A stretch of 34,537 bases of DNA, from positions 1-34,537 of the forward strand of contig JBBMKC010216135.1 of the NCBI GenBank assembly GCA_037834085.1. Reading direction: 5' to 3'. Position 1 is the stretch's first letter. Every line of letters starts with the position of its first letter. The notes beneath the pieces were generated by a model. The model saw nothing but the letters and a program-made list of their open reading frames with translations, ran no database searches and was not told the origin of the DNA. Below are positions 4,359 through 33,328 of the stretch, piece by piece. The translations under genes and the position numbers were made by a program. Source of the stretch: Bipalium vagum. Lineage: Eukaryota.

Positions 4359-7300
4359 ATGACGACGTTGACTCAGAGTAAAAAGGTAAGTTAATCAAAT
4401 AACAAGGAATTTCAGTTGCAAATTGAAATGGAACACGTTTTCTGATACATTTCCACAGTTCTTTTGATCGATTTTTGTCATTTTGAATATTTGTGTCGCG
4501 GATGCTGATCGCTCGTCGTTTCCTTTCTCAAATAAAATATTATTTCTGGTAAGCTTTCAAGGATAATTTGATCTTTTGTGCAGAAAGGGACTCATCCAAT
4601 GCTTGCTGCCTGTGAGAAGGGAGAACTTCAAACAGTAAAGGCTTTGGCAGTAGATCCGCTCAATTTGGAAATATGTGGAGAGGTGATTTACATGGTTACG
4701 TGTCTTGGTGACTTTAAGAAATGGTATACATAGGACGACAGAAGACCTATTCATCTGTGCTGCAAGAAAGGTTTCTTTTTTATTGCTAAGTTCTTGATCG
4801 AAAGAGGTTGTGACGTTGAACCATGCGATAAAGTTATTGGGTCTTTCTCAAACGATATCTTTTAATAATCGATTCAGAAATATATGAAACCCATTCACTT
4901 GGCTGCAAGGAATGGTCATGTTGATATCTTCGAGCTTTTACTTGACAAAGGGTGTAATATTGAGATTACGGATGAAGTTATTAATTTGTACTCTAAAAGC
5001 ACTTTAAAATTGAGTTCAGTTTGGTAGGAAACCCATTCACTTGGCTACAGAAAATGGTCACATTGATATTGTCAAGATTTTATCTGACAAGGGTGCTGAC
5101 ATGGAGGCCTGTGACTGGGTATTCGAATAATCCTCTAAATAATTCAAAATTTTTGAAATAGACTCAAAACAAACCCATCCATGTAGCGGCGGAGCACGGT
5201 CATTTTAACATTTTGAAATTGTTGGTTGAGAAGAGTTGCCACATTGAAGCTTGTGACCGGGTAAGTGATAAACTTAGTGAAATAATTTATAAGAATCGGT
5301 TTAGAATGGGAGGAGGCCCATTCACTCAGCTGCAGAGAAAGATGATTTTGATATTGTCGAATTCTTAATAGAGAATGATTGTGACATTGAGGCCTGTGAC
5401 TGGGTGGGTGTTTTATTTATTGCCCATAAATGAGCTTTTAAAAAATATTAAGGAAAATAGGAGACCCATTCACTCAGCGGCAGAAAAAGGTCATTATAAC
5501 ATTGTAAAATTTCTCATTGAGAAGGGTTGCGACATTGATGCTCGTGACAAAGTTATTGATTTATTGTGATGTGAATAATTTTTGAAAATAAATTCAGAAT
5601 AAAAAGAGACCTATTCACTTAGCTGAAGAAAACAATCATATTAACATTGTGCAGTTCTTGATCGAAAAGGGTTGTGATCTTGAAGCTTGTGATTGGGTTA
5701 TTAATTTCATCTGAGCAAATATTGATCTATAATATGAAATTTAGGAAAAGAAAAGACCTATTCATTTGGCAGTAGAAGAAGGTAATGTTGATGTTATCAA
5801 ACTATTGTTTGAAAAGGGCTGTGACCTTGAGGCTTGTGATGAAGTTATTGATTTCATTAAAAATGGATTCTTAAGCTTGAATTTAGGGGAGAAAAAGACC
5901 AATTCATTTAGCTGAAGAAAATAATTATGTTAAGATCACCAAATTTTTAATAGAGAATGGATGCGACATTGAAGCTTGTGACAGGGTTATTAATTTCGTC
6001 TCAACAAATATTCCTTTAAAGTATGAAATTCAGGAAAAGAAAAGACCTATTCACTTGGCAGTAGTAAAAGGTCATATTGATGTTGTGAAGCTATTGTTTG
6101 AAAAGGGTTCAGACCTTGAGGCTAGTGGTGAAGTTATTGATTTCCTTTAAAATGGATTCTTAAGCTTGAATTTAGGAGAGAAAAAGACCAATTCATTTAG
6201 CTGAAGAAAATAATCATGTTAAGATTACCGAATTTTTAGTAGAGAGTGGATGCGACCTCGAAGCTTGTGACAGGGTTATTCATTTCGTCTCAACAAATAT
6301 TGTTTTATAATAGGACATTTAGAAGATGAAAAGACCTATTCATTTAGCAGTAGAAAGAGGTCATCTGACTGTTTTCAACCTTTTGATTGAAAGGGGTTGT
6401 AACATTGAGGCTTGTGATGAAGTTGTAAATTTTTTGTCGATAATTCACTTTAAAATTGAATTCAGAGTAATAGGAGACCTATTCACATGGCAGCAAAAGA
6501 GGGCCAACTTGATATTGTCAAGGTTTTGCTTGACATGGGTTGTGACATTGAGGCTTGTGACAAAGTTATTAGTTTGTTTTCAATCATTAATTTTGAGAAT
6601 GAGTTCAGACAAATAGGAGACCTATTCACTTAGCCGCAGAAACAGGTCATCCGGATGTCTTCAAATTCTTGTTTGAGCGGAGCTATTATACTGAAAGTTT
6701 TGACGAGGTTTTGATTTGATCGTAGTAAATGATCATTTGAACTTTATTCAGAATAGAGACAAAATAATTCACTTGGTCGCAGCAAATGGTCATCTTGATA
6801 TTGTTCAGTTTTTATTTGAGAAGGGTCATGATATTGAGGCTTGTGACAAAGTTATTGATTTTGCCTTAATAAATCATTTTAAATGGGATTCAGAATAAAA
6901 GGAGGCCAGTTCACATGGCAGCAGAAGGACATCTTAAAGTGATTAAGTTTTTATTGGACAAAGGTTGTGACATTGAGGCTTGTGACTCGGTTATTGATTT
7001 TGTTCGCAAGAAATAATGTTTAAAATTGAATTTAGAAAAATAGAAGACCGATTCACTTGGCTGCATCCACTTCTCGTCTTGATATTGTCAAATTTTTGTT
7101 TGAGAAAGGTTGTGACATTGAGGCTTGTGACTGGGATTTTGATATATTGATTTGTTCCCAAGAAATAATTTTTAAAATTGTATTAAGGATAATAGAAGAC
7201 CTATTCACCACGCTGTATCAAGATTTGGTCTTGATATTGTCAAATTTTTGTTTGAAAAGGGCTGTGACATCGATGCCCGTGACAACGTATTTGATTTGTT

Positions 7301-10300
7301 ATCAATAATCAATTTTTAAATATGAATTTAGTTTGGTAGGCGACCCATTCATTTTGCTGCGAAAAATGGGCATATTGACATTTTGAAGTTTTTAATTGAA
7401 GTCGGTAGTGACATAGAAGCTTGTGATTGGGTGATTGATTTGTTCTCAACGTATGATTATTAGCCGTTTCATTTAGACTAACTCGAAACCCATTCACTTG
7501 GCTGCGAGAAAAGGTCATCTTAATATTGTGAAATTTCTTTTTGAGAGGGGTTGTGATTGTGAAGCCCGTAACGAAGTTATTGATTTATTCTCAATGAAAT
7601 ATTTTTAAAGTGAGCTCAGAAAAACAAGAGACCTATTCACTTGGCTGAGGAAAATCGTCATCTTGATGTTGTCAAGTTCTTGTTTGAAAGGACCTCTAAA
7701 ATTGGAGACTGTGACTGGGTCTTTCAATTCTTCCTATTAAATAATGTTTAGAAATAATTTCAGAGAACGACACCAATTTACATCGGTTCAGAAGAAGATC
7801 ATGTAGATGATTTGAAGCGCTTATTTGACGGGGGATGTGATATAGGTGCTTGTGATGAAGTTAATGGTGTATTTTTTATTAGCAAATTGTAAAAGTAAGT
7901 TCAGAATGGTCGGAGACCCATTCACTTGGCTGCAGAAAGTGGCCATCTGGGTGCTGTGGAGTTCTTGTTTGAGAATGGTTGTGACATTGATGCTCACGAT
8001 AAAGTTTTCCATTTGTTTTTTCAAGAAATAATTTCTGTTTAAAATGAACTCAGATTGGAAGGAGTCCCTTTCACTTAGCCGCACAAAATGGCCACTTGGA
8101 TGTTGTGAAGTTCTTGTTTGATCACTTGTGTGACTTTGACGTCTGTGACAAAGTTATTCTCTTTTCTCTATGAAAATTTTATTCAAAATGTAATCAGAAA
8201 AATAGAAGACCCGTTCACTTAGCTGCAGCAAAAGGTCACGATGATGTTTTAAAGTTCTTGGTAGAGAAGGGATGTGACATTGTGGCTTGCGAAAAAGTTA
8301 TTATTTTATTCTCTAAATGGTATAATATTATGTTGGAACAAAAATAATGACCGTTTTCCAAAAATTGTTTCCGTATCAATAATTTTAGAATACATTTATA
8401 TTGGTAACTCTATTTCTAAGGCGCGTTCTCTGCTTAATAAAAAGGCGGTTAATTTTTTAAATGCACCAATTTATTTATCCATCTTAGAAGTTTTTACAAC
8501 TCCGATGGTTTTCTTACACAAATTCTAACCTGTTCATTATGGTGCAAAGCGACAAGAAACGTAATAAGACATTAATTGACAAAATGTTTCTGAAAAATTT
8601 AAGGAAAATGGTAGTAGACTTCAGTCAGCTAATGATGATTAGTTGAAAACAATGATCGAAGTAGACTCACTATAAGTTTCGAAACACCAAAGTTCATCAT
8701 ACATGCGATATTTGAACAAAGTTTTCAAGGTTAAGATGGACCAATTGAACGAAAATCATAGGTTACTGCCGTTATGATATCTATTCCAGATATCTTTTGC
8801 TCAACAGAAACGCATCGTTTCCTGATCGTATCATTACGTTTAATGGAAATGGTTGTTGTGGGATATTGTGTAATGACTTCTGGATAATGGTTGGATCATG
8901 AAATGTGTTAAGATCATTAATGTCTAAAGGCATGTCTAAATATTGTAAATAGATGTAATGCACAAAAATCTTCTGCGACAATAAGTAGCGTTAGTTAACA
9001 AAAATGTCCTCTATTACTTCATGATAACGCTCGACCTCTCAAAGAAAACATTACTTGACAAAAATTTTATAACTATGGGTTATACCCTTCAACCCCCTCA
9101 CAAATTTAAATATTCAAGAAGTTGGGATGATTTATGCATCAGAAACAGTTGAAAAATGAAGGGTATGTGCAACACTCCTTATTGAAACTTTTCGCTATTA
9201 GAATCCCGTGTTTCTAAGGAATTGGTATAATTATGGTCATTTCACGTTGGAAGCCGTCTATTCCTTCCATTGGGTGATACTTTGATTAATAAAGCTCTGT
9301 TTGAACTGAGTTTTTGAATTTGAAAATATTAAAAAAAAAATAAAAAACGGTCACTTTATTTGCGCCCACCCACTTACCAATTATAATTTTAAAACTAAAT
9401 TCAGTCTGGAAGGAGTCCCGTTCATTTATCTGCTCAAAATGGACATTTGGATGTTGTGAAATTCTTATTTGATCATGGATGTGATATAGAGACATGTGGC
9501 GAAGTTGTTGATTTATTCTCAATTATTGATTTTTCACAAAATGGTTCAGAATGGTCGGAGACCCATCCACTTGGCTGCGGAAAAAGGTCATCTTCATATT
9601 GTCAATTTTTTGTTTGAGAAGGGTTGTGACATTGATGTCCATGATGAAGTTATTGATTTGGTCTCACAAAATAATTTTTGAATTGTGATTTCAGTATGAC
9701 TGGACACCAATCAAGTTGGCTGTGGAAAACGGTCATTTGGATGTTGTCAGGTTTTTATTTGGCAGGGAATGTGACATTGGAGGAGGAGGTAGAAAGGTAT
9801 TTTCTTTCTCAGTAAATAATTTCTTAAAGGTAATAAAGTACAATTGGAGACCCATTCACTCAGCTGCAAGAAAAGGTTATCTAAATATTGTCCAGTTCTT
9901 AATAGAGAATGGTTGCGATATTGAAGTCTGTGCGTTGGTTCGTTATTGATTCTGAATGGATGATTTTTTAAAATCAATTTCAGTTTAATAGAAAACCTAT
10001 TCATTTTGCTGCACAAAGTGGTCATATTAATATAGTGAAGCTTCTGTTTGACAAGGGTTGTGATGCTGAGGCTCGCGATAAAGTTATTGATTTGATCTCG
10101 ATGAGCAAATTTTAAAAAAATTTCAGTTTGGTAAAAAACCCATCCATCTGGCTACAGAAAACGGTCATCTTGATATTGTCAAGTTTTTGTTTGAGAGTGG
10201 TTGTGATTTTGATGATTGTGACAAAGTGATTAATTGATTTTCAATAATAATTTTTAAAAATTCATTCAGAATAGCATCCGGCCCATTCACATTGCTGCTG

Positions 10301-13300
10301 AAAAAGGTCATCTTAATATTGTCACGTTCTTCGATGAAAAGGGTTGTGACATCAAATCTTTTGACAAAGTGATTGGTTTATTGTAAATAATTTGTTTTCA
10401 ACATGAATGCAGTGGGGAAGGAGACCCATCAGTTTGGCTGCAGAAAACGGTCATATTGATATTGTCAAGTTTCTTTTCAACAAGAGTTCTGATAACGAAG
10501 TTTGTGACAAGGTTACTCGGCTTGCTCTGAAAATATATTCTTTAAATGTCGAAAATAGTTTTATTCTCATCCCATTCACTTAGCAGCAGAAAATGGTCAC
10601 CTTAATGCTGTCAAGTTCTTGATTGAGAAAGGCTGTAACATGGAGGCTTGTGATTTGGTTATTTATTTATTTGCACTAAATAATTTATAAAAAAGAAATT
10701 CAGTTCAATAAGACATCAATTCACTTAGCAGCAGAAAAAGGTTATCTAAATGTTAACGAGTTCTTGGTTGACAAGGGGTGTGACATGGAGGCTCGTGATT
10801 CGGTTATTGATTTATTGGCTCTAAATAGTTTATAAAAAAGAAATTCAGGATAATAAGAGACCAATTCACTTAGCAGTCGAAAATAATCATCTTGGTGTTG
10901 TTGAGTTCTTGATTGATAAGGGCTGTGACATGGAGGCTTGTGACAAAGTTGATTAATGTCAATCAAATAAAGTATAAAATGTATGTAGGATAACTGTCGA
11001 CCTATTTATTTGGCTGTGAAGGGAGGTCATGTTGACATAGTCAAGGTCTTATTGAGCAAAAATATTGATATTGATTATGCTGTGCAAGTAACGATTTATT
11101 TCATTTGAATAACAATAATAATAATACATGTATTTAGGGTAACTGGAATCTTGTTAATATTGCTAGCCTTAATGGTCACGGCGCTGTAGTTAAATGTTTA
11201 CTAGAACATGGTTGCAAGTGTGACGCCCTTGACGAGGTATTATTTCGCTCAAAATTTCAAGTTCAATTAAAATTCTTCAGTGGTGAAACTAATGTTCCTA
11301 TTTGAATAATAGTCTTTTCTCCTTTTAGCACTGCGAATTAAGACTAATAATAATGAATGTTGGTGAGTAATGGGGTTGATCGAAGCTAGTTCAACTAATG
11401 AGACCTATAAAATCAATACTAGCAAAAGACCAAGGATGAAACCAATGAATTAAAAGTTACTATTTTTAGATTGTTAGAGTTCTTGAAGTATGGAGAGGCT
11501 GCATTAATTGAGGTCTAAAACTAAACTAAGCAGCAACGTTGGCTGTACTTGTAATAAAGGTGCAGTAACAGGTCATGTAATCACATATCCGATATAGGTT
11601 TTCGCATGCTTAGAAGTGGTATTTGTTTAAATAAACTCTGAGAAAGCGCGAAAAATGAATATGTCATAATTACATTTCAGAAATGAACTGTCTTTCTTAC
11701 GCGACAATTAGTACGAGGGGACGGACATCGAATGTTGGAGTAAATATATTCTGAAGAGGTTCGTGGGTCTTCAAAGTGCAAATTTTGGCTTATCTGATTT
11801 GAGTGATTAGGAGGGATAAGGTCAGCCATAAAGTGTGGCTGATGCTCTAAATTGGATGCTCACTTGGATTCATTCCAAAGAAAAATCGATTGATAGCTGA
11901 CCGGTTTTTTTAACAGAGCTGGAATGTTCTGCAAATTAATTAAAAGCACGAGGTCCAAGAATGAAACACAAACATTATGTTCGATGGAATACTGCTGCCT
12001 ATGTAGATATAGGGTGTCATTAGTCCTGTGTCCACTCTATGGTGCTGAGGTGATCCTTCGTCTGGTTTGCGGTATTGTCAGGGTTTTGTCGGGGCCTTTT
12101 CTAATATTATTTTTCAGTCTCTTTTATAAATGAATGAAACTAACTATTTTCAGGAAGACCGGAAAGCATTGGTGAATTCTTCTGACGACGGTTTCATTCG
12201 AGAACTTTTGTTCAAGTTAAATTGTAAGGGTTAATGCTTTTCTCGTTTTACAGAGTGATTCCTTAATACATGTCGCATTGTGCATTATGAATTATATAAT
12301 TATGTCACTGACCGAATGAAAGTATTTCATACATTATCGCGCATCATACCTTTAACCAATTATCAATTATCACTTATTCTAACTGATATTATGGGGCACA
12401 AGTTGAACAGGAAATTAAATGATCTCAGGAAAAGCGCTCAAGAAAGACGATAAATGTCGTCACGGTGAGAGGTTTGAAAATAGCGGTATGAACATTTCAT
12501 CAACCTTGTCTTTCTCACACTGATCAGTCCAAGACAGTATAGATAGATTCTTTGACAGCGAAGAAAGGCGGGACGGTTGTTTTCCTTCGAAGACGGAAAG
12601 AAAATGGAATGATTTGGATCATCGCTCCACGGGGTTCTACAGTGACAAGAGAGAGTATATTGACAAGTCTGTTAAGAGAGAATTTTTTTAATTATGCCTG
12701 TAAAGTGCATTCAGTTAAACCAGGCATGTCCAACCTACTTCTCGCGGGCCGCATTGTGGCCCACTTATTGTGTAAATGCGGCCCAGTATCGACTCATTTT
12801 GGACCTATTTACGCATTATCATATATTCTGGTAATTTTAGGGCCTATTTAAATATTTAGGTTTGCAATGCGACCCATTAAATCAAAAGGTTGGACATCCC
12901 TGATTTAAACAAATCCAATCCACATTCATCCGTGCGAGTATGTATTAAGGAAAATCTCTGCACTGTGACTTTTATTATTTTCGTTACAGTTTCTTTAATG
13001 TTTGTTCCCCTTTTATTTTATACCACTTTTCAAATGTCATTTGAAGTCTTTGACTTCTTCTTTCTCAGCCTCGGTCCAGGCAGCGTTTGAATCAAAAGAG
13101 AAGGTTGGTCAAGGAGGTTATGGAGTGGTTTACAAAAATAAAGACTTTGATGAAAACTTCGTGGTGAAGAAAATACAACACAAACGGATTCCTAATTACG
13201 AGAAAAGTATTGAACTAAACTTGGGCAAATACAGGAAGCTTCTCTACCACGAGAACATCATTGAGTTCATTGGGGAGAAATGGGGCGAAAAGAGGTCTTT

Positions 13301-14829
13301 TGTATTGATGAGATATGCTTCAGGGGTGAGAATCTTAAATTTTATTATCATTATTATTTCCCATAATAATCAAAAAAATAATAATAAAAAAGTTGAAATA
13401 TTATTTTAAAATGATGAAATTGGAATGATAATTTCTCTTACCATTATTTAGGGGTCTCTGGATAAGTTATTGGAATATGGAGCACTGGACCACCGGACGA
13501 TTATGTTGTATAACAAAGGAATTCTTGAAGGATTGAAATTTCTTCATGCCAATGGAATCATCCACCGGGATATCAAACGTAATTGATTTGGTAAATATAC
13601 TCAAGACCAAAGACCGTTCAGAGAGGCAAAGACGATAACATTTTGGTTTGTCTCTTGACCAATTGGAACATGTTAAAAAATTTCATGAACTTTCCAAACC
13701 AAACCCTTTCAGAGAACTGTAATATCTTCCGGTTCTCCTTGACACTTTCGACAGTAGAACAAAGTTGAAGAGAAACACAAACCAAAATGTTCGCCTTTCT
13801 CAATGGTGCTCATTTGGTCGAGTCAATTCCAATTTTCGACAGAGAAATAATTTGTTTTAATTTTCAAAGCTGAAAATATTTTGCTCGATGATCGCGACAG
13901 GGTGAAGTTGTGCGACTTTGGACTTGGTCGAGTATTTACAGGTCCTGGTGCCTGTTCGGAAGATAATAACGATGAACTCTCTGAGCCAGGACCTTCCAAT
14001 GCTATGGTTTCCTATAAAACGTCCACTGAGGGTACTCATGCTTATCTTGCTCCAGAGGTGATCGTTGACGCCTGTTATTACTTTTCTTCGGACATTTGGT
14101 CGTTCGGGGCCACAAATGTAGCAATGTTGACAGGTCGGTTTACAGATCCATCCTTTCATTACTTAAAGTCATGTTTAACTATCTCTATTATTAGTGCTTG
14201 CGCTGCTGGGACCATTTGTGGAATCTGGCACTCGATAAAGGAACCAAACCAAAAATACATTCATTTTTCTGAAATAATCTCCTTTAAAGGCAACATACTT
14301 TTGTCCCATGGAACCACCAGCTCTCGAAGAGTCTTTCCATTATGCAGTTGGCACTTTACGTACCAATACCAGCTTGACTTTTACTTTTCCTCGTCCAAGT
14401 GACGAAAAGCGCTGAAGTCGTCATTTCATTTTAAAGGTTTGGAACAAAAAGAAGTGCAAAGGAGATAAGTCTGGTTGATGCGTGTTCAGTGTCATTAATT
14501 ATGCCGCTCGGGTCCACAATAATGGAATCCCACACATTATTATTATCTTTATTATTATTATTATTATTATTTGCATCTTCTATGAAAAGTATCTTTAATT
14601 AAATTTTTTTGTTTGGTTAGGGAAACGTCCTTATTATGATGAGCATGGGGAACCTGCCCTTAAGATCGGAACTAAAAAGAAAATCGACTTTATGCCTTTG
14701 AAACCAATGTCAAAGAACTTGAAGCATCTTTTAGAGAAAGCTCTTACTCCGGACCCAAAACTTCGAAGTTCTGCCGATGAGCTCCTTCGATGGATACGTT
14801 CAAAGGAGCCATATTTTGATGAGTTCTGA
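4359..14829 (+). CDS. Copy A: predicted multi-exon ankyrin-repeat protein kinase (~39 ANK repeats plus C-terminal Ser/Thr kinase, roughly 1600 aa if all exons are joined)
   Basis: Candidate first exon ATG 4359-4385 (MTTLTQSKK|GTAAG) is tentative. The last ANK exon ends in phase 0 at 11236. It can join the phase-0 linker exon 12154-12223 directly, or via small exons 11329-11362 and 11478-11512, and so reach the kinase in frame. The fusion is inferred from phase compatibility and the same arrangement in copy B. The nearer acceptor at 11280 gives TGG TGA (ANK-only product). Confidence 0.6.
4584..11236 (+). CDS. Copy A ankyrin array: 39 phase-0 exons, one ANK repeat each
   Basis: Exon starts: 4584, 4734, 4878, 5020, 5162, 5305, 5453, 5598, 5745, 5887, 6034, 6176, 6323, 6466, 6609, 6752, 6894 (96 nt), 7036, 7188, 7332, 7477, 7620, 7764 (96 nt), 7905, 8054, 8198, [1.1-kb intron with mariner], 9405, 9550, 9695 (102 nt), 9839, 9984, 10127, 10270, 10413, 10559, 10704, 10849, 10989, 11138. 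All others are 99 nt. All are stop-free and AG/GT-bounded, except a GA donor at 7135. Consensus xxxRPIHLAAExGHLDIVKFLFEKGCDIEACDx is a canonical ankyrin repeat. Confidence 0.95.
8331..9374 (+). mobile_element. Decayed mariner element in the intron between ANK exons 26 and 27
   Basis: TA-flanked imperfect TIRs: TA|TGTTGGAACAAAAATAATGACCGTTTT and AAAACGGTCACTTTATTTGCGCCCACCCACT|TA. Transposase remnants F(P)DRIITFN (~8818) and LLHDNARP (9014-9037). Confidence 0.85.
12154..14829 (+). CDS. Copy A linker plus Ser/Thr protein kinase domain (STE/MAP3K-like appearance)
   Basis: Exons 12154-12223, 13069-13325, 13452-13578, 13870-14133 and 14621-14829 splice in frame. Motifs: [90 protein letters not shown], ending ...YFDEF-TGA. 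All catalytic motifs are intact. The subfamily call is by eye only. Confidence 0.93.
12721..12902. mobile_element. Non-autonomous hAT-type MITE (182 bp) in a copy A intron
   Basis: TIRs CAGGCATGTCCAACCT / AGGTTGGACATCCCTG (15/16 match). 8-bp TSD AGTTAAAC / ATTTAAAC (7/8). Absent from the equivalent intron of copy B. Confidence 0.88.
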
Positions 14830-24483: not shown

Positions 24484-26995
24484 CTAATCAAAGAATGACT
24501 CCATAGAATATATCCATTGAAGGAGCTCGTTGGCGGAACTTCGACGTCTTGGGTCCGGATTAAGAGCTTTCCTTAAAAGACGCTTCATGTTCTTTGACAT
24601 CGGTTTCAAAGGCATGAAGTCGATTTTCTTTTCAACTCCAATTTTAAGGACAGGATCACCAGGCTCATAGTAATAAGGACGTTTTCCTAACCAAACAAAT
24701 GAATTTAATGAAAGAGACTTTTTCGAAGAAGATGGAAATAATAATACTAATGATATTGTGTGGAATTCCATTATCGTGGATCAACACTACACGTTTTCAA
24801 AAATGTATGTTTTTCGCACCTGTCCTTTGACACACGACCAACATGGCACTAACCGTCAAATTTAGACATCCACCAGTAAAAGGTATAAACTCAGTCGAAA
24901 CCATTTTCCATGATCATCTGAATGTATAGAGGCTCTGCAGTTGTTGGACCATTCACAATAAGATATTATGCGACAAAGTGAGTCCTGTAAAATGTTGCCA
25001 AAATGTTCTTGAAATTAAACAAAGGTGATTTAATTTACAACGGCGTTACTTGTCAAGAAACAGGGATGTATTCTTACGACTCCGAAACTAAGCAGCAATA
25101 AATTGGTTGGATATTTAAAAGTGAATCGGTCCCAAAGTGCTCAAAAGTTACAGAGAACAGTCGGTTTCATGGCACAAAAGTGTGTTACCTCTAAAGAAGA
25201 ATATTTTGGAAAAATGAATGTATTTTTGGTTTGGCTCCTTTTTCCATTGCCAGATTCCACAAGTCCTCCCAGAAGTGCATGCGCTATTAATAGAGTTAGT
25301 TAAACATGACTTTGAGTAATGAAAGAATGGATCTGTGAACCAACCTGTCAACATTGCCACATTTGTGGCCCCGAACGACCAAATGTCCGAAGAAAAGTAA
25401 TAACAGGCGTCAACGATCACCTCTGGAGGAAGGTACGCTACAGTACCATGCGTTGACGTTTTATAGGGATCAACATCACTCGAGAGTCCTGATCCAGATA
25501 TTTCATCGTTATTATCTTCCGAATAGGCACCATGACCTGTAAATACTCGACCGAGTCCAAAGTCGCACAACTTGACCCTGTCGCGATTATCGAGCAGAAT
25601 ATTTTCAGCTTTGAAAATTAAAACAAATTATTTCTCTGTCGAAAATTGGAATTGACTCGACCAAATGAGCACCATTGAGAAAGGCAGACTTTGGTTTGTC
25701 TTTTCTTCACCTCTGTTCTACTGTCGAAAGTGTCACGGAGAACCCGGGAAATATTAAAGTTAATGAAATGTTTGAACATGTTCGAATTGGTGAAGGGACA
25801 AACCAAAATGTTATCGTCTCCGCCTCTCTCAACGATCTTTGGTCTTGAGTACATATACAAATCAATTACGTTTGATATCCCGGTGGATGATTCCATTGGA
25901 ATGAAGAAATCTCAATCCTTCAAGAATTCCTTTGTCAAAATCAATAATCATCCGGTGGTCCATGGCAACATTTTCTAATAACTGATCCAGAGACCCCTGA
26001 AATTATGGTAAGACAAATTATCACCCCCATTCCGAAATGGGGAATTTTTTAATTGTTTACTTTAAAATATTTAAAAAGATGAATGAAATTTTTAAGACAA
26101 ACTTATTTTTAAAATTTATTAAAAAAGAAATAACCAGGTCTGAGAAAATTTGTTTAAAAATTATTTGTATTGACCAATTAATAAATCCATTAAAAAAATG
26201 ACATGTAATTCTGAGCATAAACCGATTGATATTAACAAAAACGATGGAAATAATAATAAATAATAATGATAAAAAAATTTAAGGTTCTCACCCCTGGAGC
26301 ATATCTCATCAATACATAGGACCTCTTTTCGTCCCACTTCTCCCCAATGAACTCAATGATGTTCTCGTGGTAGAGACGCCTGCCGAATATGCTCAAGTTT
26401 AGTTCAACACTTTTCTCGTAATTTGAAATCCGTTTGTGTCTTATTTTCTTCACCACAAAGTTTTGATCAAAGTCTTCATTCTTGTAAACCACTCCATAAC
26501 CGCCTTGACCAACCTTCTCTTTCGATGAAAACGCCGCCTGGACCGAGGCTGAGAAATAAGAAGTCAACAACGTTAAATGACATTTAAAAATTGATATAAA
26601 ATAAAAGGGGAACAAACATTAAAGAAACTGTCATGAAAACAATAAAATTCACAGTGCAGAGGTTTTCCTTAATACATACTCTGACAGTGACGGTGTTTAT
26701 CGTCTATTTTGAAAGCTTTTCCTGAGATCAGTTGATTTCCTGTAAATCTTGTACCGCAGAATATCAACCAGAATAAGTGATAATTGATAATTGGTAAAGG
26801 TATGATGCGCGATAATGTATGAAATATTTTCATTCGGTCAGTAACATAATTATATAATTCATAATGCACAATACGACATGTATTAAGGAATCACTCTGCA
26901 AAATGACAAAAGTATTGATCCTTACAATTTAACTTGAACAAAAATGCTCGAATGATACCATCGTCCGAAGAATTCACCAATGCTTTCCGGTCTTC
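24484..26995 (-). CDS. Copy B linker plus Ser/Thr kinase domain
   Basis: Minus-strand exons 26995-26926, 26548-26292, 25996-25870, 25608-25345 and 24686-24484 splice in frame. Motifs: GQGGYG, HRDIKPEN, DFG, GTVAYLPPE, SDIWSFG. Ends FFD-TAG, two codons before the TGA shared with copy A. Several differences from copy A are synonymous. Confidence 0.9.
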
Positions 26996-27423
26996 CTGAA
27001 AATAGTTAGTTTCATTCATTTATAATAGAAACTGAAAAATAATATTAGAAAAGGCCCCGACAAATCCTTACAATACCGCAAACCAGGCGAAGGATCACCT
27101 CGGCACTATAGAGTGGACACAGGACTAATGACACTCTATATCTGCATAGGCAACAGAATTCCATCGAACATAATGTTTGTGTTTCATTCTTGTACCTCGA
27201 GCTTTTAATTATTTTGCAGAACTTTCCAGCTCTATTAAATAAATCTCTCAGCTATCAATCGATTTTTCTTTGAAATGAGTACAGCTGAGCATCCAATACT
27301 GAACATCAGCAGAACTTTGTGGCTGACCTTGTCCCTCCTTATCACTCAAATCAGATAAACCAAAATTTGCAGTTTGAAAACCAGCGAACCTCTTCAGCAT
27401 ATACTTACCACAACATTCGATGT

Positions 27424-30118
27424 GATATTTTTTGTAGAGATCGGTGTAAGACCTAGACTATCGCACTGGAAGCTTCCATTTTTAATATATTAATCAGAAT
27501 CCATATCAAATTTAACTTTATTTTTTCACAATAATCATCAGTTATACTTTTTTGCCTTTTTAATTTATTTAAAATAAATGATCTACATTATCATGACCTG
27601 CATTTTTAGCAGACAAATATTTTTTTAAAGTTATAAGTTGATACAACGAAGTCGGATCAAGTGAATGCACACCTTCGGTGTTTAAAGTCTCACTGCATTT
27701 CGGTTTATAAATTCTATAACCTTCTCTATCTCTTTTTAGTTTTATCTTTTTATCTAATTCAGTTTATATACTTGCAACATATTCGTTGTTGAAACTATCA
27801 CTTACATATTTTATTAAATTTAAATATTTCTCCATTTCATTAAAATTATAATGTCCACCATAATTTTTGTCATAGTTATTAAATCTTTTGTTAATTTTAT
27901 TGGGATTTTTATTTTATTTATTATTAAAATATTTCTTTGAACTGATGGATTTATTGCAGCAGCAATTCCTCTATCTTCAGTATCAAATATTTTTTTTATA
28001 ATAATCACCATCATATTTAGAAGGTTTTTCTTCAACTTTTACATCAAGTAAAGTTTTTAATTTTTCATTACCCTTTACTTTTTCCCCATCTTTAATTCGA
28101 CTAGGATTATATAAAGTTTCTATAATTTGTTGATTTTCATCTTTCATAAATGTTTGATTCTCTAATTTATCAGACGTCTTTGTGATTAGCACATTGGTAA
28201 CTGGTTTATGAAATGTATCTAAATCTATAGATAATCCTCTTTCTGCTTTCCATTGATTTAATTGATTAGTTTCAATTTTATTTCTGACTATTAATTCTTT
28301 AAAATCTTCCATTCTCTTTTATTTAATTTTTTAAGCAAACTCACATCTTCTCTTTATACTCTTTTTAAATCAAATCCTTTTTAACTTCTTTATTTAAATT
28401 TTTAATTACATTTCCATTTTTAATTTTTTTTAATATTTTCCTTACATTCAGTAATTATTATTTTTGCTTGTTCAACTTCATCATTAGTTGAAATTTATCT
28501 TCTGATGCTTTTAATTAAAATAGATAAAGTTTCTTAATTGATGATTCTATTGTTTCTCAAATTTCTTTATATATCCTTTTTCTTTTCGAAGTAATTCCTA
28601 TACTAATTGTTTCTCAAATAAATAATTGTACTGCTCCAAAAATTGATGTTGCAACAGGAACATTAATTAATAAACTAGTTGCTAATGTTGATATTTCTGC
28701 CATAGTAGCAGTTCCAATTCCAATCATTCCTCCAATGAAAATGCTTCCTAATTTTAAATTTGAATCTATAGTAAATTTTAATATTTTTATAATTTTTCAA
28801 TTAAATGATTAGAAAATGGTTCTTCTTAAATAAATTTATTATGTCGTAAGATGAGGTATCGAAATTTGTCCTCAGTTGACTTTCGTTCATAAATAGGGGT
28901 AGTTGGTCTTAAAACTTCAGAATTTTCATCATAAAGTTCGAGAAACTCCAAATCACTTTCAGATACATCATAATTTTTTCATTAAATTCCTCTTTTTCTT
29001 TCATTTTTATATAAATTTGAAAGTCTTTAGAACTTTTAATAGTAAAGTATAAAGATTTAATCTCAGAAAGATACTTTGTACCTAATATTAGATAAAAAGA
29101 TTTCTATTTTTTAAATTCAGGGTTTTAGGAAGTTTCATTAGGAGAAATACCAACTGAACTATAATTTTTATTATTATAAAAATTGGTAAAATTAAATTTG
29201 CTAATAAATGTATCCGTTTTCTATTACCCTGTTCTCTACATTTCGTAAACATATTTTTTAGGATTTTAATAACTCTTTCAATGACCACATTCCTTCATTG
29301 TCTTTTGATTAAATTTATATTTCATTATCATCATAAAATTCTTCGAATGTTTTATTGTAAAATTATACCTTTATCAACCAAGTTTTTATTTGGTGACTCC
29401 AAAAATTGTGTCAAATGAACCTGTTATAGATTTTCCTTTTTTATTTTTTAAAGGAACAGCAAAAGCATATCTTGTACATAAATCAATTACTGTTAAAATT
29501 ATTTTATATTCCCTTTCCTCTGGGACAAAAGTTAAATCTGCTGACCAAGTATCATCTTTATAAAAAACTTTAGGATAGTGCTTAGGTTTTCTAACTTCTT
29601 TATGAAATTCATTTGGTAATTGTTTTTTTATTTTCTGATTTTAATTTTTGCGATTTGTCAAAAAGTTTTCCATTTGCAGTATTTTTAGCAGCTCATGGTA
29701 AACCTAATCCGAAAGTTACTTTACCTTTAATAATTTAATTTTACTAAAGCTTTTTCAAGGTTTTCTCTTGGAGTTGGATTTCTTATTGTTCATTTCATGA
29801 ATCATTTCAATACCAGCATTATGTCTATCTTTTAAATATTGTGAAACATATTTTACATCATGTTTCATTGCAGCTTGATCTATTCAGTTTTTAGGTTATG
29901 AGTCATGTTTCAAATACGTGATATATTTGGATTATTTAAAACATCTTCATAATTTTTTAAACGTTTATCAATATTTGTTCCTAGTCCCGTAAGACTTGTT
30001 TGTTAAAAGGATTTTAAAATTTTAAATGTAATTCTTTCCTGTTTCATCTTTGATTTTACTACTAACCATATTATCCCAAACACTCATTATTATTAGTCTT
30101 TATTTTAAGTATTAAAAT
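27424..30118 (-). mobile_element. Decayed Polinton/Maverick (adintovirus-like) fragment between the ANK array and kinase of copy B
   Basis: Minus strand, in order: PLA2-like remnant (GLGTNIDKRLK...IDQAAMKHDVKY...DRHNA, ~29990-29815); retroviral-type integrase (EFHKEVRKPKHYPKVFYKDDTWSADLTFV...YKIILTVIDLCTRYAFAVPLK...VIERVIKILK, ~29670-29100); G/A/T-rich hydrophobic segment (GGMIGIGTATMAEISTLATSLL, ~28735-28630); ORF 28312-27983 (LDTFHKPVT); and a DPTSLYQL...LSAKNAGHDN remnant (~27660-27590). Confidence 0.8.
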
Positions 30119-30194
30119 CTGTTACTCAAAAAGGAACATTAGTTTCACCACTGAAGAATTTTAATTGACCTTGAAATTAAGAGCAAAATAATAC

Positions 30195-33100
30195 CTCGTC
30201 AAGGGCGTCACACTTGCAACCATGTTCCAGTAAACATTTAACTACAGCACAGTGACCATTAAGGCTGGCAATATCAACAAGATTCCAGTTTCCCTGATAA
30301 TATTTATTATTATTTTCAAATGAAATAAATCGTTACTTGCACAGCATAATCAATATCAATATTTTTGCTCAATAAAAACTTGACAATGCCAACATGACCT
30401 CGATTTACAGCCATATGAATAGGTCGACAATTATCCTACACACATTTTATACTATATATAATTGACATTAATCAATCAATAACTTCGTCACAAGCCTCCA
30501 TGTCACAACCCTTATCAAACAAGAACTCAACAACATGAAGATGATTATTTTCGACTGCTAAGTGAATTGGTCTCTTATTGTCCTGAATTTCTTTTTAAAA
30601 AAACTATTGTGTAAATAAATCAATAACCGAATCACGAGTCTCCATGTCACACCCCTTTCTGACCAAGAACTCGATAACATCCAGATGACCGTTTTTTGCT
30701 GCGAACTGAATTGGTCTATTATTTTTCTAAATTTACTTTTTAAAAACTATTTATTGCAAAAAAATCAATAACAAAATCACGAGCTTCCAAGTCACAGGAC
30801 TTTTCGAACAAAAACTCCATTACATCCAGATGACCGTTTTCAGCTGCAAAGTGCATAGGTCTCCTGTTTAACTGAATTTTTTGTTAAAGCGTATTTACTG
30901 CAAATAAATCAATTACTGAATCACGAGCCTCCATGTCACAGCCCTTCCCGACCAAGAACTCGATAACATTCAGATGACCGTTTCCTGCTGCTAAGTGAAT
31001 GGGGTGAGAATTAAACTATTTTCGACATTTAAAGAATATATTTTCAGAGTAAACCGGATAACCTTGTCACAAACCTCGTTATCAGAACTCTTGTCGAATA
31101 GAAACTTGACAACATCAAGATGACCTTTTTCTGCAGCCAAACCGATGGGTCTCTTTCCCCACTGCGTTCATGTTTAAAACAAATTATTTACAATACACCA
31201 ATCACTTTTTCATAAGATTTGATGTCATAACCTTTTACATCGAAGAACGTGACAATATCAAGATGACCTTCTTCAGCAGCAATGTGAATGGGTCGGACTC
31301 CATTCTGAATGAATTTTTAGAAATATTTTTTAAAAATCAATCAATCACTTTGTCACAAGCATCAAGTTCACAACCACTCTCAAACAAAAACTTGACAATA
31401 TTAAGATGACCGTTTTGTGTAGCCACATGGACGGGTTTTTGACCAAACTAAAAACTTTTTTAAACTTGCTCACCCAGAGCAAATCAATAACTTGATTACG
31501 AGCCTCAGCATCACAACCCTTGTCAAACAGAAGCTTCACAATATCAATATGACCACTTTTTGCAGCAAAATGAATAGGTTTTCTTTTCAACTGAAATTGA
31601 TTTTACAAATTATCGTTTGAGAATCAATCACGCACCCAGTCACAGGCCTCAATATCGCAACCATTCTCTATTAAGAACTGGACAATATTTAGATAACCTT
31701 TTATTGCAGCTGAGTGAATGGGTCTCCAATTGTACTTTATTACCTTTAAGAAATTATTTACTGAAAAAGAAAATACCTTTCCACCTCCCCCTCCAATGTC
31801 ACATCCGCTGCCAAATAAAAACCTGACAACATCCAAATGACCGTTTTCCACAGCTACTTTGATGGGTGTCCGGTCTTGCTGAAATAAAAATTCAAAATAT
31901 TTTTTGTGAGAAAAAATCAATAACCTGATCATGGACATCAATGTCACAAACCTTTTCAAACAAGAAATTAATAATATGAAGATGACCTTTTTCCGCAGCC
32001 AAGTGGATGGGTCTTTGACTATTCTGAACCATTTTTGAAAAATCAATAATTGAGAATAAATCAACAACTTTGTCACATGTCTCTATATCACACCCGTGAT
32101 CAATTAAGAATTTCACAACATCCAAATATCCATTTTGAGCAGATAAATGAACGGGACTCCTTCCAGACTGAACTTAGTTTTAAAATTATTTTCATGAAAA
32201 AGAAAGATTAACATGGTCACAAGCAGCCATGTCACAGTTTTTCTCAGTCAAGAACTTAATAACATCCAGTTGACCCTTTTCAGCAGCAATGTGAATGGGT
32301 CGTACTCCATTCTGAATGAATTTTTAGAAAATTTTATAGAAAATCAATCAATCACTCTGTCACGAGCACTAAGGTCACAACCACATTCAAACAAAAAATT
32401 GACAATATCAAGATGACCTTTTTCTGTAGCCAAATGGACGGGTCTTTTACCGAACTGAATAATTTTTAAAATTTACTCATTCAGATCAAATCAATAACCA
32501 GATCACGAGCCTCAGAATTACAACCATTGTCAAAAAGAAACCTTATAATACCAAGATAACCTTTTTCTGTAGCCAAATGGACGGGTCTTTTACCAAGCTG
32601 AATAATTTTTAAAATTTTTATCACCCAGATCAAATCAATAACTTCATCACGAGCCTCAGCATCACAACCCTTGTCAAACAGAAGCTTCACAATATCAATA
32701 TGACCACTTTTTGCAGCAAAGTGAATCGGTTTGCTTTCCGACTGAAATTAACTTTACAAATTATGAATTTAGAAAAATCACTCACCCAGTCACAGGCCTC
32801 AATGTTGCAACCATTCTCTATTAAGAACTTGACAATATTTAGGTAACCTTTTTCTGCAGCTGAGTGAATGGGTCTCAAATTGTATTATTATTTATCTTTA
32901 TTATCTTTAAGAAATTTTTTACTGAGAAAGAAATTACCTTCCTACCTCCTCCTTCAATGTCACATCCCTTACCATATAAAAACCTAACAACATCCAAATG
33001 ACCGTTTTCCACAGCTAACTCGATGGGTGTCCAGTCATACTGAAATCACATTAAAAAATTATTTTGTGAGAACAAATCAATAACTTCATCATGGGCATCA

Positions 33101-33328
33101 ATAACACAAGCCTTCTCAATCAAGAAATTGACAATATCAAGATGACCTTTTTCCGCCGCCAAGTGGATGGGTCTCCGACCATTCTGAACCGTTTTGTGTA
33201 AAATCAATAATTGAGAATAAATCAATAACTTCGTCACATGTCTCTATATCACAGCCGTGATCAAATAAGATTTTCACAACTTCCAAATGACCATTTTCAG
33301 CAGATAAATGAAAGGGACTCCTTCCAGA
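30195..33328 (-). CDS. Copy B ankyrin array (visible part): 22 phase-0 single-repeat exons
   Basis: Exon 5' ends on the minus strand: 33328, 33183, 33039 (102 nt), 32884 (acceptor displaced), 32741, 32597, 32454, 32311, 32167, 32023, 31878 (102 nt), 31734, 31590, 31447, 31304, 31161, 31015, 30871, 30726, 30582, 30435, 30293. The rest are 99 nt and stop-free where translated. No start codon or upstream exons lie within the window. Confidence 0.93.

What the first reader, a model, noticed from the sequence alone, without database searches (positions are those of the whole stretch)
4584..11236. Variation concentrates on the ankyrin binding surface, and the intron cuts the beta-hairpin tip
The scaffold (PIH..A..GH..IV..L...GCD..A.D) is nearly fixed. 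Exon codons 1-4, 8, 11-12 and 33 vary widely: starts DDRR, KYMK, FGRK, TQNK, YDWT, YNWR, WGRR, FYSH; last residue K/E/W/R/S/N/L/Q; helix-1 pair RN/EK/ST/SR/QN/AK/RK. These map to the beta-turn and first-helix positions that contact targets and are randomised in DARPin libraries. The hairpin is made from the end of one exon and the start of the next, so each new junction would create a new hairpin sequence.
Basis: partly seen in the sequence, partly recalled or inferred. Interest (0 to 1): 0.8.

Follow-up and report, generated by a model that had tools for sequence, protein, structure and literature searches.

The report
Ankyrin exon array: ordinary surface variation
Two neighbouring kinase genes carry about 60 small exons that each encode one ankyrin repeat; the repeats do differ most at the loop tip where one exon joins the next, but that tip drifts at about the neutral rate, as in ankyrin repeats generally, so nothing shows selection for diversity.

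Summary
The observation largely holds. The window carries 61 one-repeat exons: 39 in gene A (+, 4584-11236) and 22 in its inverted duplicate, gene B (-, 33328-30195). Almost all are 99 nt and phase 0, and each gene ends in an intact protein-kinase domain.

The exon register equals the Pfam and published ankyrin numbering, so the intron lies between repeat positions 33 and 1, the two central residues of the beta-turn. Positions 1, 3, 33 and 2 are the most variable. Positions 4, 8, 11 and 12 are no more variable here than several non-binding exposed positions.

This is the pattern published for 7,407 ankyrin repeats (PMC8415598). Canonical ankyrin homologues in the same genome have the same intron position.

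My approximate site models found no site with dN/dS above 1:
- Turn tip: omega 0.98 (95% CI 0.82-1.15).
- Whole concave face: 0.61.
- Convex and basal faces: 0.31.
- Core: 0.22.

Simulations show that omega of 1.5 at the tip would have been detected. The one duplication junction I could resolve lies inside an exon, not in an intron. No RNA data exist, so splicing is untested.

Verdict: an ordinary property of ankyrin repeats, in a new member of a known kind.

The parts
4584..4682 (+). Gene A, exon A00: divergent first, cap-like repeat exon (99 nt, AG/GT)
   Evidence: No Pfam hit on its own. About 54% nucleotide distance from every other exon.
4734..8296 (+). Gene A, exons A01-A25: one ankyrin repeat each, phase 0, separated by introns of 41-53 nt. 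Irregular ones: A16 (6894-6989, 96 nt), A22 (7764-7859, 96 nt) and A17 (7036-7134), whose donor reads GA in the window.
   Evidence: Base 7136 reads T, giving a GT donor, in the only contig of run X1 that covers it.
8297..9404 (+). Long intron (1,108 nt) holding inserted DNA. It is shared with gene B, upstream of B00.
   Evidence: intron lengths. Blastn 8438-8656 against 33967-33737 at 87%. A contig of X1 skips 8293-8860.
9405..11236 (+). Gene A, exons A26-A38: 13 repeats whose counterparts are B08-B21. A28 (9695-9796) is 102 nt.
   Evidence: Exon divergence from B is 6-19%; intron divergence is about 11%.
12142..12235 (+). Approximate linker exon between the repeat array and the kinase
   Evidence: The only coding-like stretch between 11237 and 13000 that is conserved with paralogue C (tblastx, 65% over 34 aa). 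11725-12100 has stops and is not conserved with C.
13065..14826 (+). Gene A protein-kinase domain in four coding pieces: about 13065-13325, 13452-13583, 13851-14135 and 14599-14826
   Evidence: Pfam Pkinase positions 1-89, 83-126, 125-195 and 194-259 of 263. The nearest solved kinases are MEK1 and STE-like, at E about 1e-9 only.
30195..33328 (-). Gene B, exons B00-B21: 22 repeat exons. B00-B07 is a block duplicate of B08-B14. B03 (32786-32884) has an AA acceptor. B07 (32213-32311) is chimeric. B02 and B10 are 102 nt.
25163..26681 (-). Gene B kinase region, paralogous to 12936-14315 of gene A
   Evidence: Blastn 86-90%. The kinase exon at 25343-25627 is 84% identical to A's.

Best explanation
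This is a pair of inverted, recently duplicated genes. An earlier scan note places the genome in a flatworm; I did not check that. Each gene encodes a long solenoid of ankyrin repeats (39 or more in A, 22 or more in B) followed by a short linker and a serine/threonine kinase domain.

The array grew by in-register tandem duplication of a unit of about 144 bp: one 99-nt exon plus one intron of about 45 nt. That growth mode automatically leaves a phase-0 intron at the same place in every repeat, between positions 33 and 1, at the centre of the beta-turn.

Selection keeps the fold. The core evolves at omega 0.22 and the convex and basal faces at 0.31. The solvent-exposed turn tip (positions 33, 1 and 3) is almost unconstrained, at omega about 1. 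The rest of the concave face lies in between.

The variation pattern is therefore the normal signature of an ankyrin repeat scaffold. It is the same pattern that DARPin design copied from nature.

Shown here: the exon anatomy, the register, the variability profile, the omega values and the intact kinase. Inferred: that the concave groove binds partners which localise or regulate the kinase, and that unequal crossing-over is the growth mechanism.
For: - Exon map and splice sites.
- Register: Pfam Ank 1-32 matches exon 1-32. The consensus-repeat structure 1N0R (chain positions 1-32) and DARPin residues 47-78 align in the same register.
- AlphaFold2 model of one exon with the 61-exon alignment: pLDDT 84.5, helices 5-11 and 15-23. 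These are the published limits (PMC8415598).
- Entropy profile. Spearman correlation between this window and seven other paralogues is 0.75.
- Selection, 13 A-B exon pairs: overall dN/dS 0.57. Nonsynonymous divergence at the tip is 0.169, against 0.144 at synonymous sites and 0.111 in introns (Fisher p=0.55 and 0.10).
- Selection, site models on 60 and 101 exons: M1a equals M2a; the extra class of M8 is at omega 1.14 and 1.00; M8a versus M8 is not significant.
- Class omegas with confidence intervals. With site-specific synonymous rates no site has beta above alpha.
- Power: omega of 1.5 at three sites was detected in 12 of 12 simulations.
- No stop codon in any of the 61 exons, and the kinase profile is covered from 1 to 259.
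- Same intron position in canonical ankyrin homologues of the genome, with 99- and 198-nt exons starting at repeat position 1.
- PMC8415598 reports positions 1, 3, 8, 11, 12 and 33 as the most divergent in 7,407 repeats.
Against: - Omega near 1 can also come from a mixture of purifying and episodic positive selection. I ran no branch-site or episodic test.
- My site models are approximations of codeml. Topology and branch lengths were fixed from IQ-TREE, likelihoods were interpolated on an omega grid, and the alignment has only 33 codons. Deep branches are saturated, and gene conversion among repeats violates the single-tree assumption.
- The concave face evolves twice as fast as other exposed faces. 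The family is large (at least 35 kinase-exon paralogues) and repeat number changes quickly, which is what a recognition family would also show.
- There are no expression or splicing data at all.
Confidence: 0.75

Rival explanations
1. Diversifying selection. The family is a variable intracellular recognition system, and positive selection keeps its concave-face residues diverse so that different paralogues and repeats bind different targets, with the kinase as output.
For: - Concave omega of 0.61 is twice that of the convex and basal faces, and the tip is at about 1.
- Across seven other paralogues the six most variable positions are exactly the six DARPin library positions.
- The genome holds at least 35 paralogous kinase exons, and arrays range from 5 to 36 or more repeats.
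- The M7 versus M8 test is nominally significant (LRT 12.9 and 11.9).
Against: - The extra class of M8 sits at omega 1.0-1.14 and M8a fits as well. M2a assigns zero weight to a class above 1.
- No single site exceeds 1 significantly, and none has beta above alpha once the synonymous rate varies by site.
- Shallow clades give the same answer.
- The power simulation excludes a tip omega of 1.5 or more under the model.
- Residue use at positions 2-4 is biased (N/G, R/K/W, R/K), not free.
Confidence: 0.15
2. Junctional diversity by splicing. Because all exons are symmetric and phase 0, regulated exon skipping or choice would produce many isoforms, each with new hairpin sequences at the new junctions (Dscam-like logic).
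For: - Every exon is phase 0-0, so any skip keeps the frame.
- There are 51 distinct turn tetrapeptides among 59 junctions.
- Two exons have a non-canonical splice site in the assembly: A17 donor GA and B03 acceptor AA.
Against: - Introns are 41-53 nt with ordinary GT..AG ends. By general knowledge, introns this short favour intron definition and constitutive splicing.
- Intron lengths show no preference for multiples of three.
- The A17 donor reads GT in the one public DNA run.
- Canonical ankyrin genes have the same architecture.
- No RNA run exists to show any isoform.
Confidence: 0.05
3. Decay. The arrays are young duplicates or pseudogenes under generally relaxed constraint, and the variation is simply mutational noise.
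For: - dN/dS between A and B is fairly high overall (0.57).
- Two splice sites are non-canonical in the assembly.
- There are transposon-like insertions in introns.
Against: - There is no stop codon in 61 exons.
- Core omega is 0.22 and strongly below 1 (2dlnL 470).
- The constraint is patterned exactly by the fold.
- Both genes keep an intact kinase domain.
Confidence: 0.05

Closest known systems
Ankyrin repeat family in general (Pfam PF00023; conservation profile of 7,407 repeats in PMC8415598)
   Same: - 33-residue unit with helices at 5-11 and 15-23 and a beta-turn at 33-1.
- Conserved P5, H7, A9, G13, L21, G25, D27 and D32.
- The most divergent positions are 1, 3, 33, then 11, 12 and 8, on the concave face.
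   Different: - This family has R/K instead of T at position 4 and I instead of L at position 6.
- It has two cysteines per repeat: C26 in 81% and C31 in 55% of repeats (GCDxEACD in place of GADVNAxD).
DARPin combinatorial libraries (designed ankyrin repeat proteins; positions listed in PMC10484509)
   Same: The randomised library positions correspond one to one to exon positions 33, 1, 3, 11 and 12, plus 31 from my recollection of the original design. These are the top-entropy positions here and in the wider family.
   Different: DARPins are synthetic and were modelled on natural variability, so the resemblance is expected rather than informative. Natural residue use here is biased, and only the turn tip is free (omega about 1). 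Helix-1 positions 11 and 12 are constrained (omega 0.41).
Canonical ankyrin genes (ankyrin-R/B/G type) with exons of one or two repeats
   Same: In this genome's ankyrin homologues (L019, L020) the exons are 99 or 198 nt and start at repeat position 1 with AG directly upstream. This is the same phase-0 intron position. From memory, unverified here: vertebrate ANK1 repeat exons are likewise mostly 99 or 198 bp.
   Different: The canonical genes have a fixed 24-repeat membrane-binding domain and no kinase. Here the arrays vary in length between paralogues and end in a kinase.
Ankyrin-array kinase family noted earlier in this scan (s1-734032)
   Same: One repeat per small exon upstream of a kinase. 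There are many paralogues with different repeat numbers. I recovered at least 35 kinase-exon paralogues and arrays of 5 to 36 exons in nine loci.
   Different: That note left open whether the family is a variable recognition system. The selection tests here give no support for diversifying selection.

Membership tests
Ankyrin repeat (PF00023) | 33-residue unit matching the family profile end to end above the curated cut-off | tested here: met
   Exon 9550-9648: 33.4 bits against a cut-off of 21.1, protein 1-32 on profile 1-32. 493 PDB ankyrin or DARPin chains matched.
Ankyrin repeat (PF00023) | Helix-turn-helix with helices at 5-11 and 15-23 and loop ends that form the inter-repeat beta-turn | tested here: met
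   AlphaFold2 model of one exon with the 61-exon alignment: pLDDT 84.5, H5-11 and H15-23. These are the limits given in PMC8415598.
Ankyrin repeat (PF00023) | TPLH motif at positions 4-7 | tested here: inconclusive
   P5 97% and H7 86% are kept. Position 4 is R/K in 81% (T in 9%) and position 6 is I rather than L. This is a family-specific variant of the motif.
Gene family under diversifying selection at its binding surface | dN/dS significantly above 1 at contact positions | tested here: not met
   Tip omega 0.98 (0.82-1.15). M1a equals M2a. M8a versus M8 not significant. No site with beta above alpha. Tested on pairs, shallow clades and the full tree, with a power check.
Gene family under diversifying selection at its binding surface | Binding-face positions more variable than other exposed positions | tested here: met
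   Concave versus convex plus basal entropy: p=0.005 in the window and 9e-5 in other paralogues. Omega 0.61 against 0.31.
Cassette-exon diversity systems (Dscam-like alternative splicing) | Transcripts that use alternative subsets of the tandem exons | not testable with these tools
   No RNA run holds the locus. The single DNA run is kept only as short contigs.
One-repeat-per-exon ankyrin genes | Phase-0 intron between repeat positions 33 and 1 in successive repeats | tested here: met
   59 of 61 exons have AG and GT flanks in that register. The same register is found in canonical ankyrin homologues L019 and L020.

The most novel reading that the evidence does not exclude
The ankyrin-array kinases are a lineage-specific, fast-turnover family of intracellular sensors. 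The unconstrained turn tips, together with frequent gain, loss and reshuffling of whole repeats by unequal crossing-over, would supply standing variation in binding specificity. Selection would then act episodically on particular paralogues, too sparsely for site-averaged omega to exceed 1.
Probability: 0.12. Interest if true: 0.65.

Novelty: new member of a known kind. Interest (0 to 1): 0.25.

Why it matters
The finding looked like a natural DARPin library with a built-in way of generating hairpins. The tests show that the resemblance is the ordinary consequence of how ankyrin repeats fold and evolve. DARPin design copied this natural pattern, and the intron position is shared with classical ankyrin genes.

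That removes the main reason to treat this locus as a diversity-generating system. It also gives numbers (omega by structural class) that other notes on the same family in this scan can use.

What remains of interest is the family itself: dozens of kinases carrying very long, rapidly resized ankyrin arrays with an unusual two-cysteine repeat signature. Their partners and roles are unknown.

Tried and rejected
- **RNA evidence.** The look-up of sequencing runs returned no RNA run, so expression and splicing could not be tested. Read laying on the single DNA run gave only short contigs. These served for one base check (7136) and gave no structural information.
- **First shallow-clade analysis.** In one search I mimicked cut branches with very long ones. 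This was an artefact, because at low omega the chain does not reach stationarity. I discarded it and redid the analysis with properly decoupled subtrees.
- **M7 versus M8 alone.** This would have suggested selection (p about 0.002). I rejected it because the added class sits at omega of about 1 and M8a fits equally well.
- **Candidate exon at 11740-11830.** It is open in gene B at 27305-27403, which would have made gene A a pseudogene. I rejected it because it is not conserved with paralogue C, whereas 12142-12235 is.
- **Literature.** Searches for one-exon-per-ankyrin-repeat papers and for planarian ankyrin kinases found nothing specific. The Mosavi 2004 review is not held.
- Exons were searched and folded singly, by reference. 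The large representative protein search was not used, because no claim here rests on absence of relatives.
- **5' end of gene A.** Its start codon was not resolved.
Full report
**1. What is in the sequence**

The window is one whole contig (G000:C216135) of a fragmented 440-Mb assembly. It is AT-rich, at 23-39% G+C.

A scan for AG + 99 nt + GT open frames, relaxed for length and donor, finds a head-to-tail array of small exons on the + strand from 4584 to 11236 and a second array on the - strand from 33328 down to 30195.

Gene A has 39 exons. A00 to A25 run in order: 4584-4682, 4734-4832, 4878-4976, 5020-5118, 5162-5260, 5305-5403, 5453-5551, 5598-5696, 5745-5843, 5887-5985, 6034-6132, 6176-6274, 6323-6421, 6466-6564, 6609-6707, 6752-6850, 6894-6989, 7036-7134, 7188-7286, 7332-7430, 7477-7575, 7620-7718, 7764-7859, 7905-8003, 8054-8152, 8198-8296.

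After a 1,108-nt intron, A26 to A38 follow: 9405-9503, 9550-9648, 9695-9796, 9839-9937, 9984-10082, 10127-10225, 10270-10368, 10413-10511, 10559-10657, 10704-10802, 10849-10947, 10989-11087, 11138-11236.

Gene B has 22 exons in the window (B00 33230-33328 to B21 30195-30293) and probably continues beyond the contig end.

- 56 exons are 99 nt, two are 96 nt and three are 102 nt.
- All are phase 0 at both ends, and none contains a stop.
- The 58 short introns are 41-53 nt.
- Two splice sites are non-canonical in the assembly: the A17 donor (GA at 7135-7136) and the B03 acceptor (AA). In the only public DNA run holding the locus, base 7136 reads T. That restores a GT donor there.

**2. The rest of the genes**

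Blastn shows that A from 8438 onward and B are inverted, tail-to-tail duplicates at 86-90% identity.

Downstream of the array, four coding pieces of gene A cover the Pfam protein-kinase profile from position 1 to 259 of 263. The nearest solved kinases are MEK1 and STE-like, at E about 1e-9 only.

A short linker exon at about 12142-12235 is conserved with a more distant paralogue. The stretch 11725-12100, which carries stops in A, is not conserved with it and is intronic.

The genome holds at least 35 paralogous kinase exons. Nine of those loci carry arrays of 5 to 36 exons of the same type. I confirmed the family size but did not test the organism.

**3. Register and structure**

A single exon matches Pfam Ank with protein 1-32 on profile 1-32. 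It also matches the consensus-repeat structure 1N0R in the same register (1-32 on 1-32) and DARPin residues 47-78 with exon positions 2-33.

Exon numbering is therefore the standard numbering in which TPLH occupies positions 4-7. [quoted passage not shown]

An AlphaFold2 model of one exon, given the alignment of all 61 exons, has pLDDT 84.5 and helices at exactly 5-11 and 15-23.

So the phase-0 intron lies between the two central residues of the turn.

The DARPin library positions listed in PMC10484509 (45, 46, 48, 56, 57, 78, 79, 81 and so on) translate to exon positions 33, 1, 3, 11 and 12. From memory of the original design, position 31 also belongs to that set.

Each exon was used by reference on its own.

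**4. Variability**

Over the 58 internal exons the entropy ranking is:
- position 1: 3.37 bits
- positions 3 and 33: 2.73
- position 2: 2.53
- then positions 28, 12, 22, 24, 11, 31 and 30, at 2.0-2.2.

Position 4 (R/K in 81%) and position 8 are below several 'scaffold' positions.

I used the published surface classes (PMC8415598, Table 1):

| Class | Positions | Mean entropy, this window | Mean entropy, 126 exons of seven other paralogues |
|---|---|---|---|
| Core | 4-7, 9, 10, 17, 18, 21 | 1.02 | 1.08 |
| Concave | 1-3, 8, 11, 12, 32, 33 | 2.34 | 2.74 |
| Convex | 13-16, 19, 20, 22-24 | 1.66 | 1.68 |
| Basal | 25-31 | 1.63 | 1.50 |

- Concave exceeds the other exposed classes at p=0.005 in the window. 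The turn tip drives this; without it p=0.22.
- In the independent set of 126 exons the excess holds at p=9e-5, and without the tip at p=0.0025.
- In that set the six most variable positions are 1, 33, 12, 11, 3 and 31.

This is the published general profile: positions 1, 3, 11, 12 and 33 are the most divergent of 7,407 repeats, with 8 also noted (PMC8415598).

**5. Selection**

(a) Thirteen positionally matched A-B exon pairs (Nei-Gojobori counts):
- Overall dN/dS is 0.57.
- Turn-tip codons have nonsynonymous divergence of 0.169, against 0.073 elsewhere (p=0.001).
- That tip value does not exceed synonymous divergence (0.144, p=0.55) or intron divergence (59/530 = 0.111, p=0.10).

(b) I wrote a GY94-F3x4 likelihood with topology and branch lengths fixed from IQ-TREE and fitted site mixtures on an omega grid.
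- 60 window exons: M0 omega 0.33. M1a equals M2a. M7 versus M8 gives LRT 12.9, but the added class is at omega 1.14 and M8a versus M8 gives LRT 0.3.
- 101 exons (A, B and two paralogues, one of them collinear with A): M1a equals M2a. The M8 class is at omega 1.00 and M8a is identical.

(c) Class estimates on the 101-exon tree:

| Class | Omega | 95% CI |
|---|---|---|
| Tip (33, 1, 3) | 0.98 | 0.82-1.15 |
| Helix-1 pair (11, 12) | 0.41 | 0.33-0.53 |
| Concave | 0.61 | 0.55-0.69 |
| Convex | 0.31 | 0.27-0.35 |
| Basal | 0.31 | 0.27-0.36 |
| Core | 0.22 | 0.18-0.24 |

Restricting the analysis to clades shallower than 0.8, 0.5 or 0.3 substitutions per codon gives a tip omega of 0.96, 0.88 and 0.94.

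(d) Letting each site have its own synonymous rate, no site has beta above alpha. The tip class has alpha 1.7, beta 1.0 and a ratio of 0.59.

(e) Simulation on the same tree detected omega of 1.5, 2 and 3 at three sites in 12 of 12 runs each, with no false positive at omega 1.

The second clause is not met: variability is greater than at exposed non-binding positions.

Caveats: fixed trees, 33 codons, saturation on deep branches, gene conversion among repeats, and no episodic test.

**6. Do introns make new hairpins?**

Formally yes. Any new exon adjacency pairs a new position 33 with new positions 1-3, and 51 different turn tetrapeptides occur at 59 junctions. But nothing shows that the intron is used this way.
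- Arrays change by in-register duplication, which keeps frame and periodicity wherever the crossover falls. At the one block-duplication junction I could resolve (B07, 32213-32311), the first 45 nt resemble B14 (89%) and the rest do not. That breakpoint is inside the exon.
- Intron lengths are spread evenly over the three residue classes modulo 3, and most in-frame ones carry stops.
- The same intron position is found in this genome's homologues of classical ankyrin. Contigs C164672 and C39671 have exons of 99 nt and 198 nt that start at repeat position 1 directly after AG. The 198-nt exon matches ankyrin-1/2 residues 302-366 at 63 bits.
- The genome has at least 2,240 first-look ankyrin candidates, many in open frames of 33-60 residues. 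One-repeat exons are commonplace here.

**7. Verdict**

But it describes the normal behaviour of ankyrin repeats in a gene built by tandem exon duplication. There is no evidence of diversifying selection or of a junction-based diversity mechanism.

The locus is a new member of a known kind. The family itself was already noted in this scan on other DNA.

What stays open:
- the family's function;
- its unusual R/K4 and C26/C31 signature;
- whether the exons are alternatively used. This needs RNA data that do not exist publicly.

Noticed in passing
window 7135-7136: The donor of exon A17 reads GA in the window. The only contig of public run X1 covering base 7136 reads T, which gives GT. This is either an assembly error or an allele.
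   Followed up: partly
window 32885-32886 (- strand): Exon B03 (32786-32884) has AA instead of AG as its acceptor, while its reading frame is intact. It may be a recently silenced exon or an assembly error.
   Followed up: no
all repeat exons, codons 4, 26 and 31: Family signature that differs from canonical ankyrin repeats. Position 4 is R/K instead of T. There are two cysteines per repeat: C26 in 81% and C31 in 55% in the window, and C26 in 113 of 126 exons of other paralogues. Stacked along the solenoid, these would form a cysteine ladder on the basal side. Its role is unknown.
   Followed up: no
window 32213-32311 (exon B07): Chimeric exon at the junction of the B00-B07 / B08-B14 block duplication. 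The first 45 nt are 89% like B14, while the best match for the remaining 54 nt is only 78% (A36).
   Followed up: partly
window 8297-9404 and 33329-about 34100: Both genes have the same long intron with inserted, transposon-like DNA before the SGRSP exon. A contig of run X1 lacks 8293-8860, which suggests an indel polymorphism.
   Followed up: no
codons 1 and 33 of the exons: The estimated synonymous rate is about twice the average at the exon-terminal codons (alpha 2.0 at sites 1 and 33). In the A-B pairs, synonymous divergence at the tip is 0.28 against 0.13 elsewhere. Possible causes are crossovers in introns giving exon ends a different history, or chance.
   Followed up: partly
window 12471-12936 and 27423-30122: Insertions private to one paralogue: about 465 nt in A between the linker exon and the kinase, and about 2.7 kb in B after the last repeat exon.
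   Followed up: no
window 13920-14030: The kinase has a long acidic, proline-rich insert between the DFG and APE motifs (the activation segment). No solved kinase aligned across it.
   Followed up: no
L019 (G000:C39671) and L020 (G000:C164672): Two canonical ankyrin (R/B/G-type) homologues in the same genome, with repeat exons of 99 and 198 nt in the same register as the kinase family.
   Followed up: partly
window 5603-6424: A two-exon (289-nt) unit is repeated 2.8 times inside gene A (exons A07-A12). A09/A11 are 8% apart and A08/A10 are 13% apart, so this is a recent internal expansion.
   Followed up: partly
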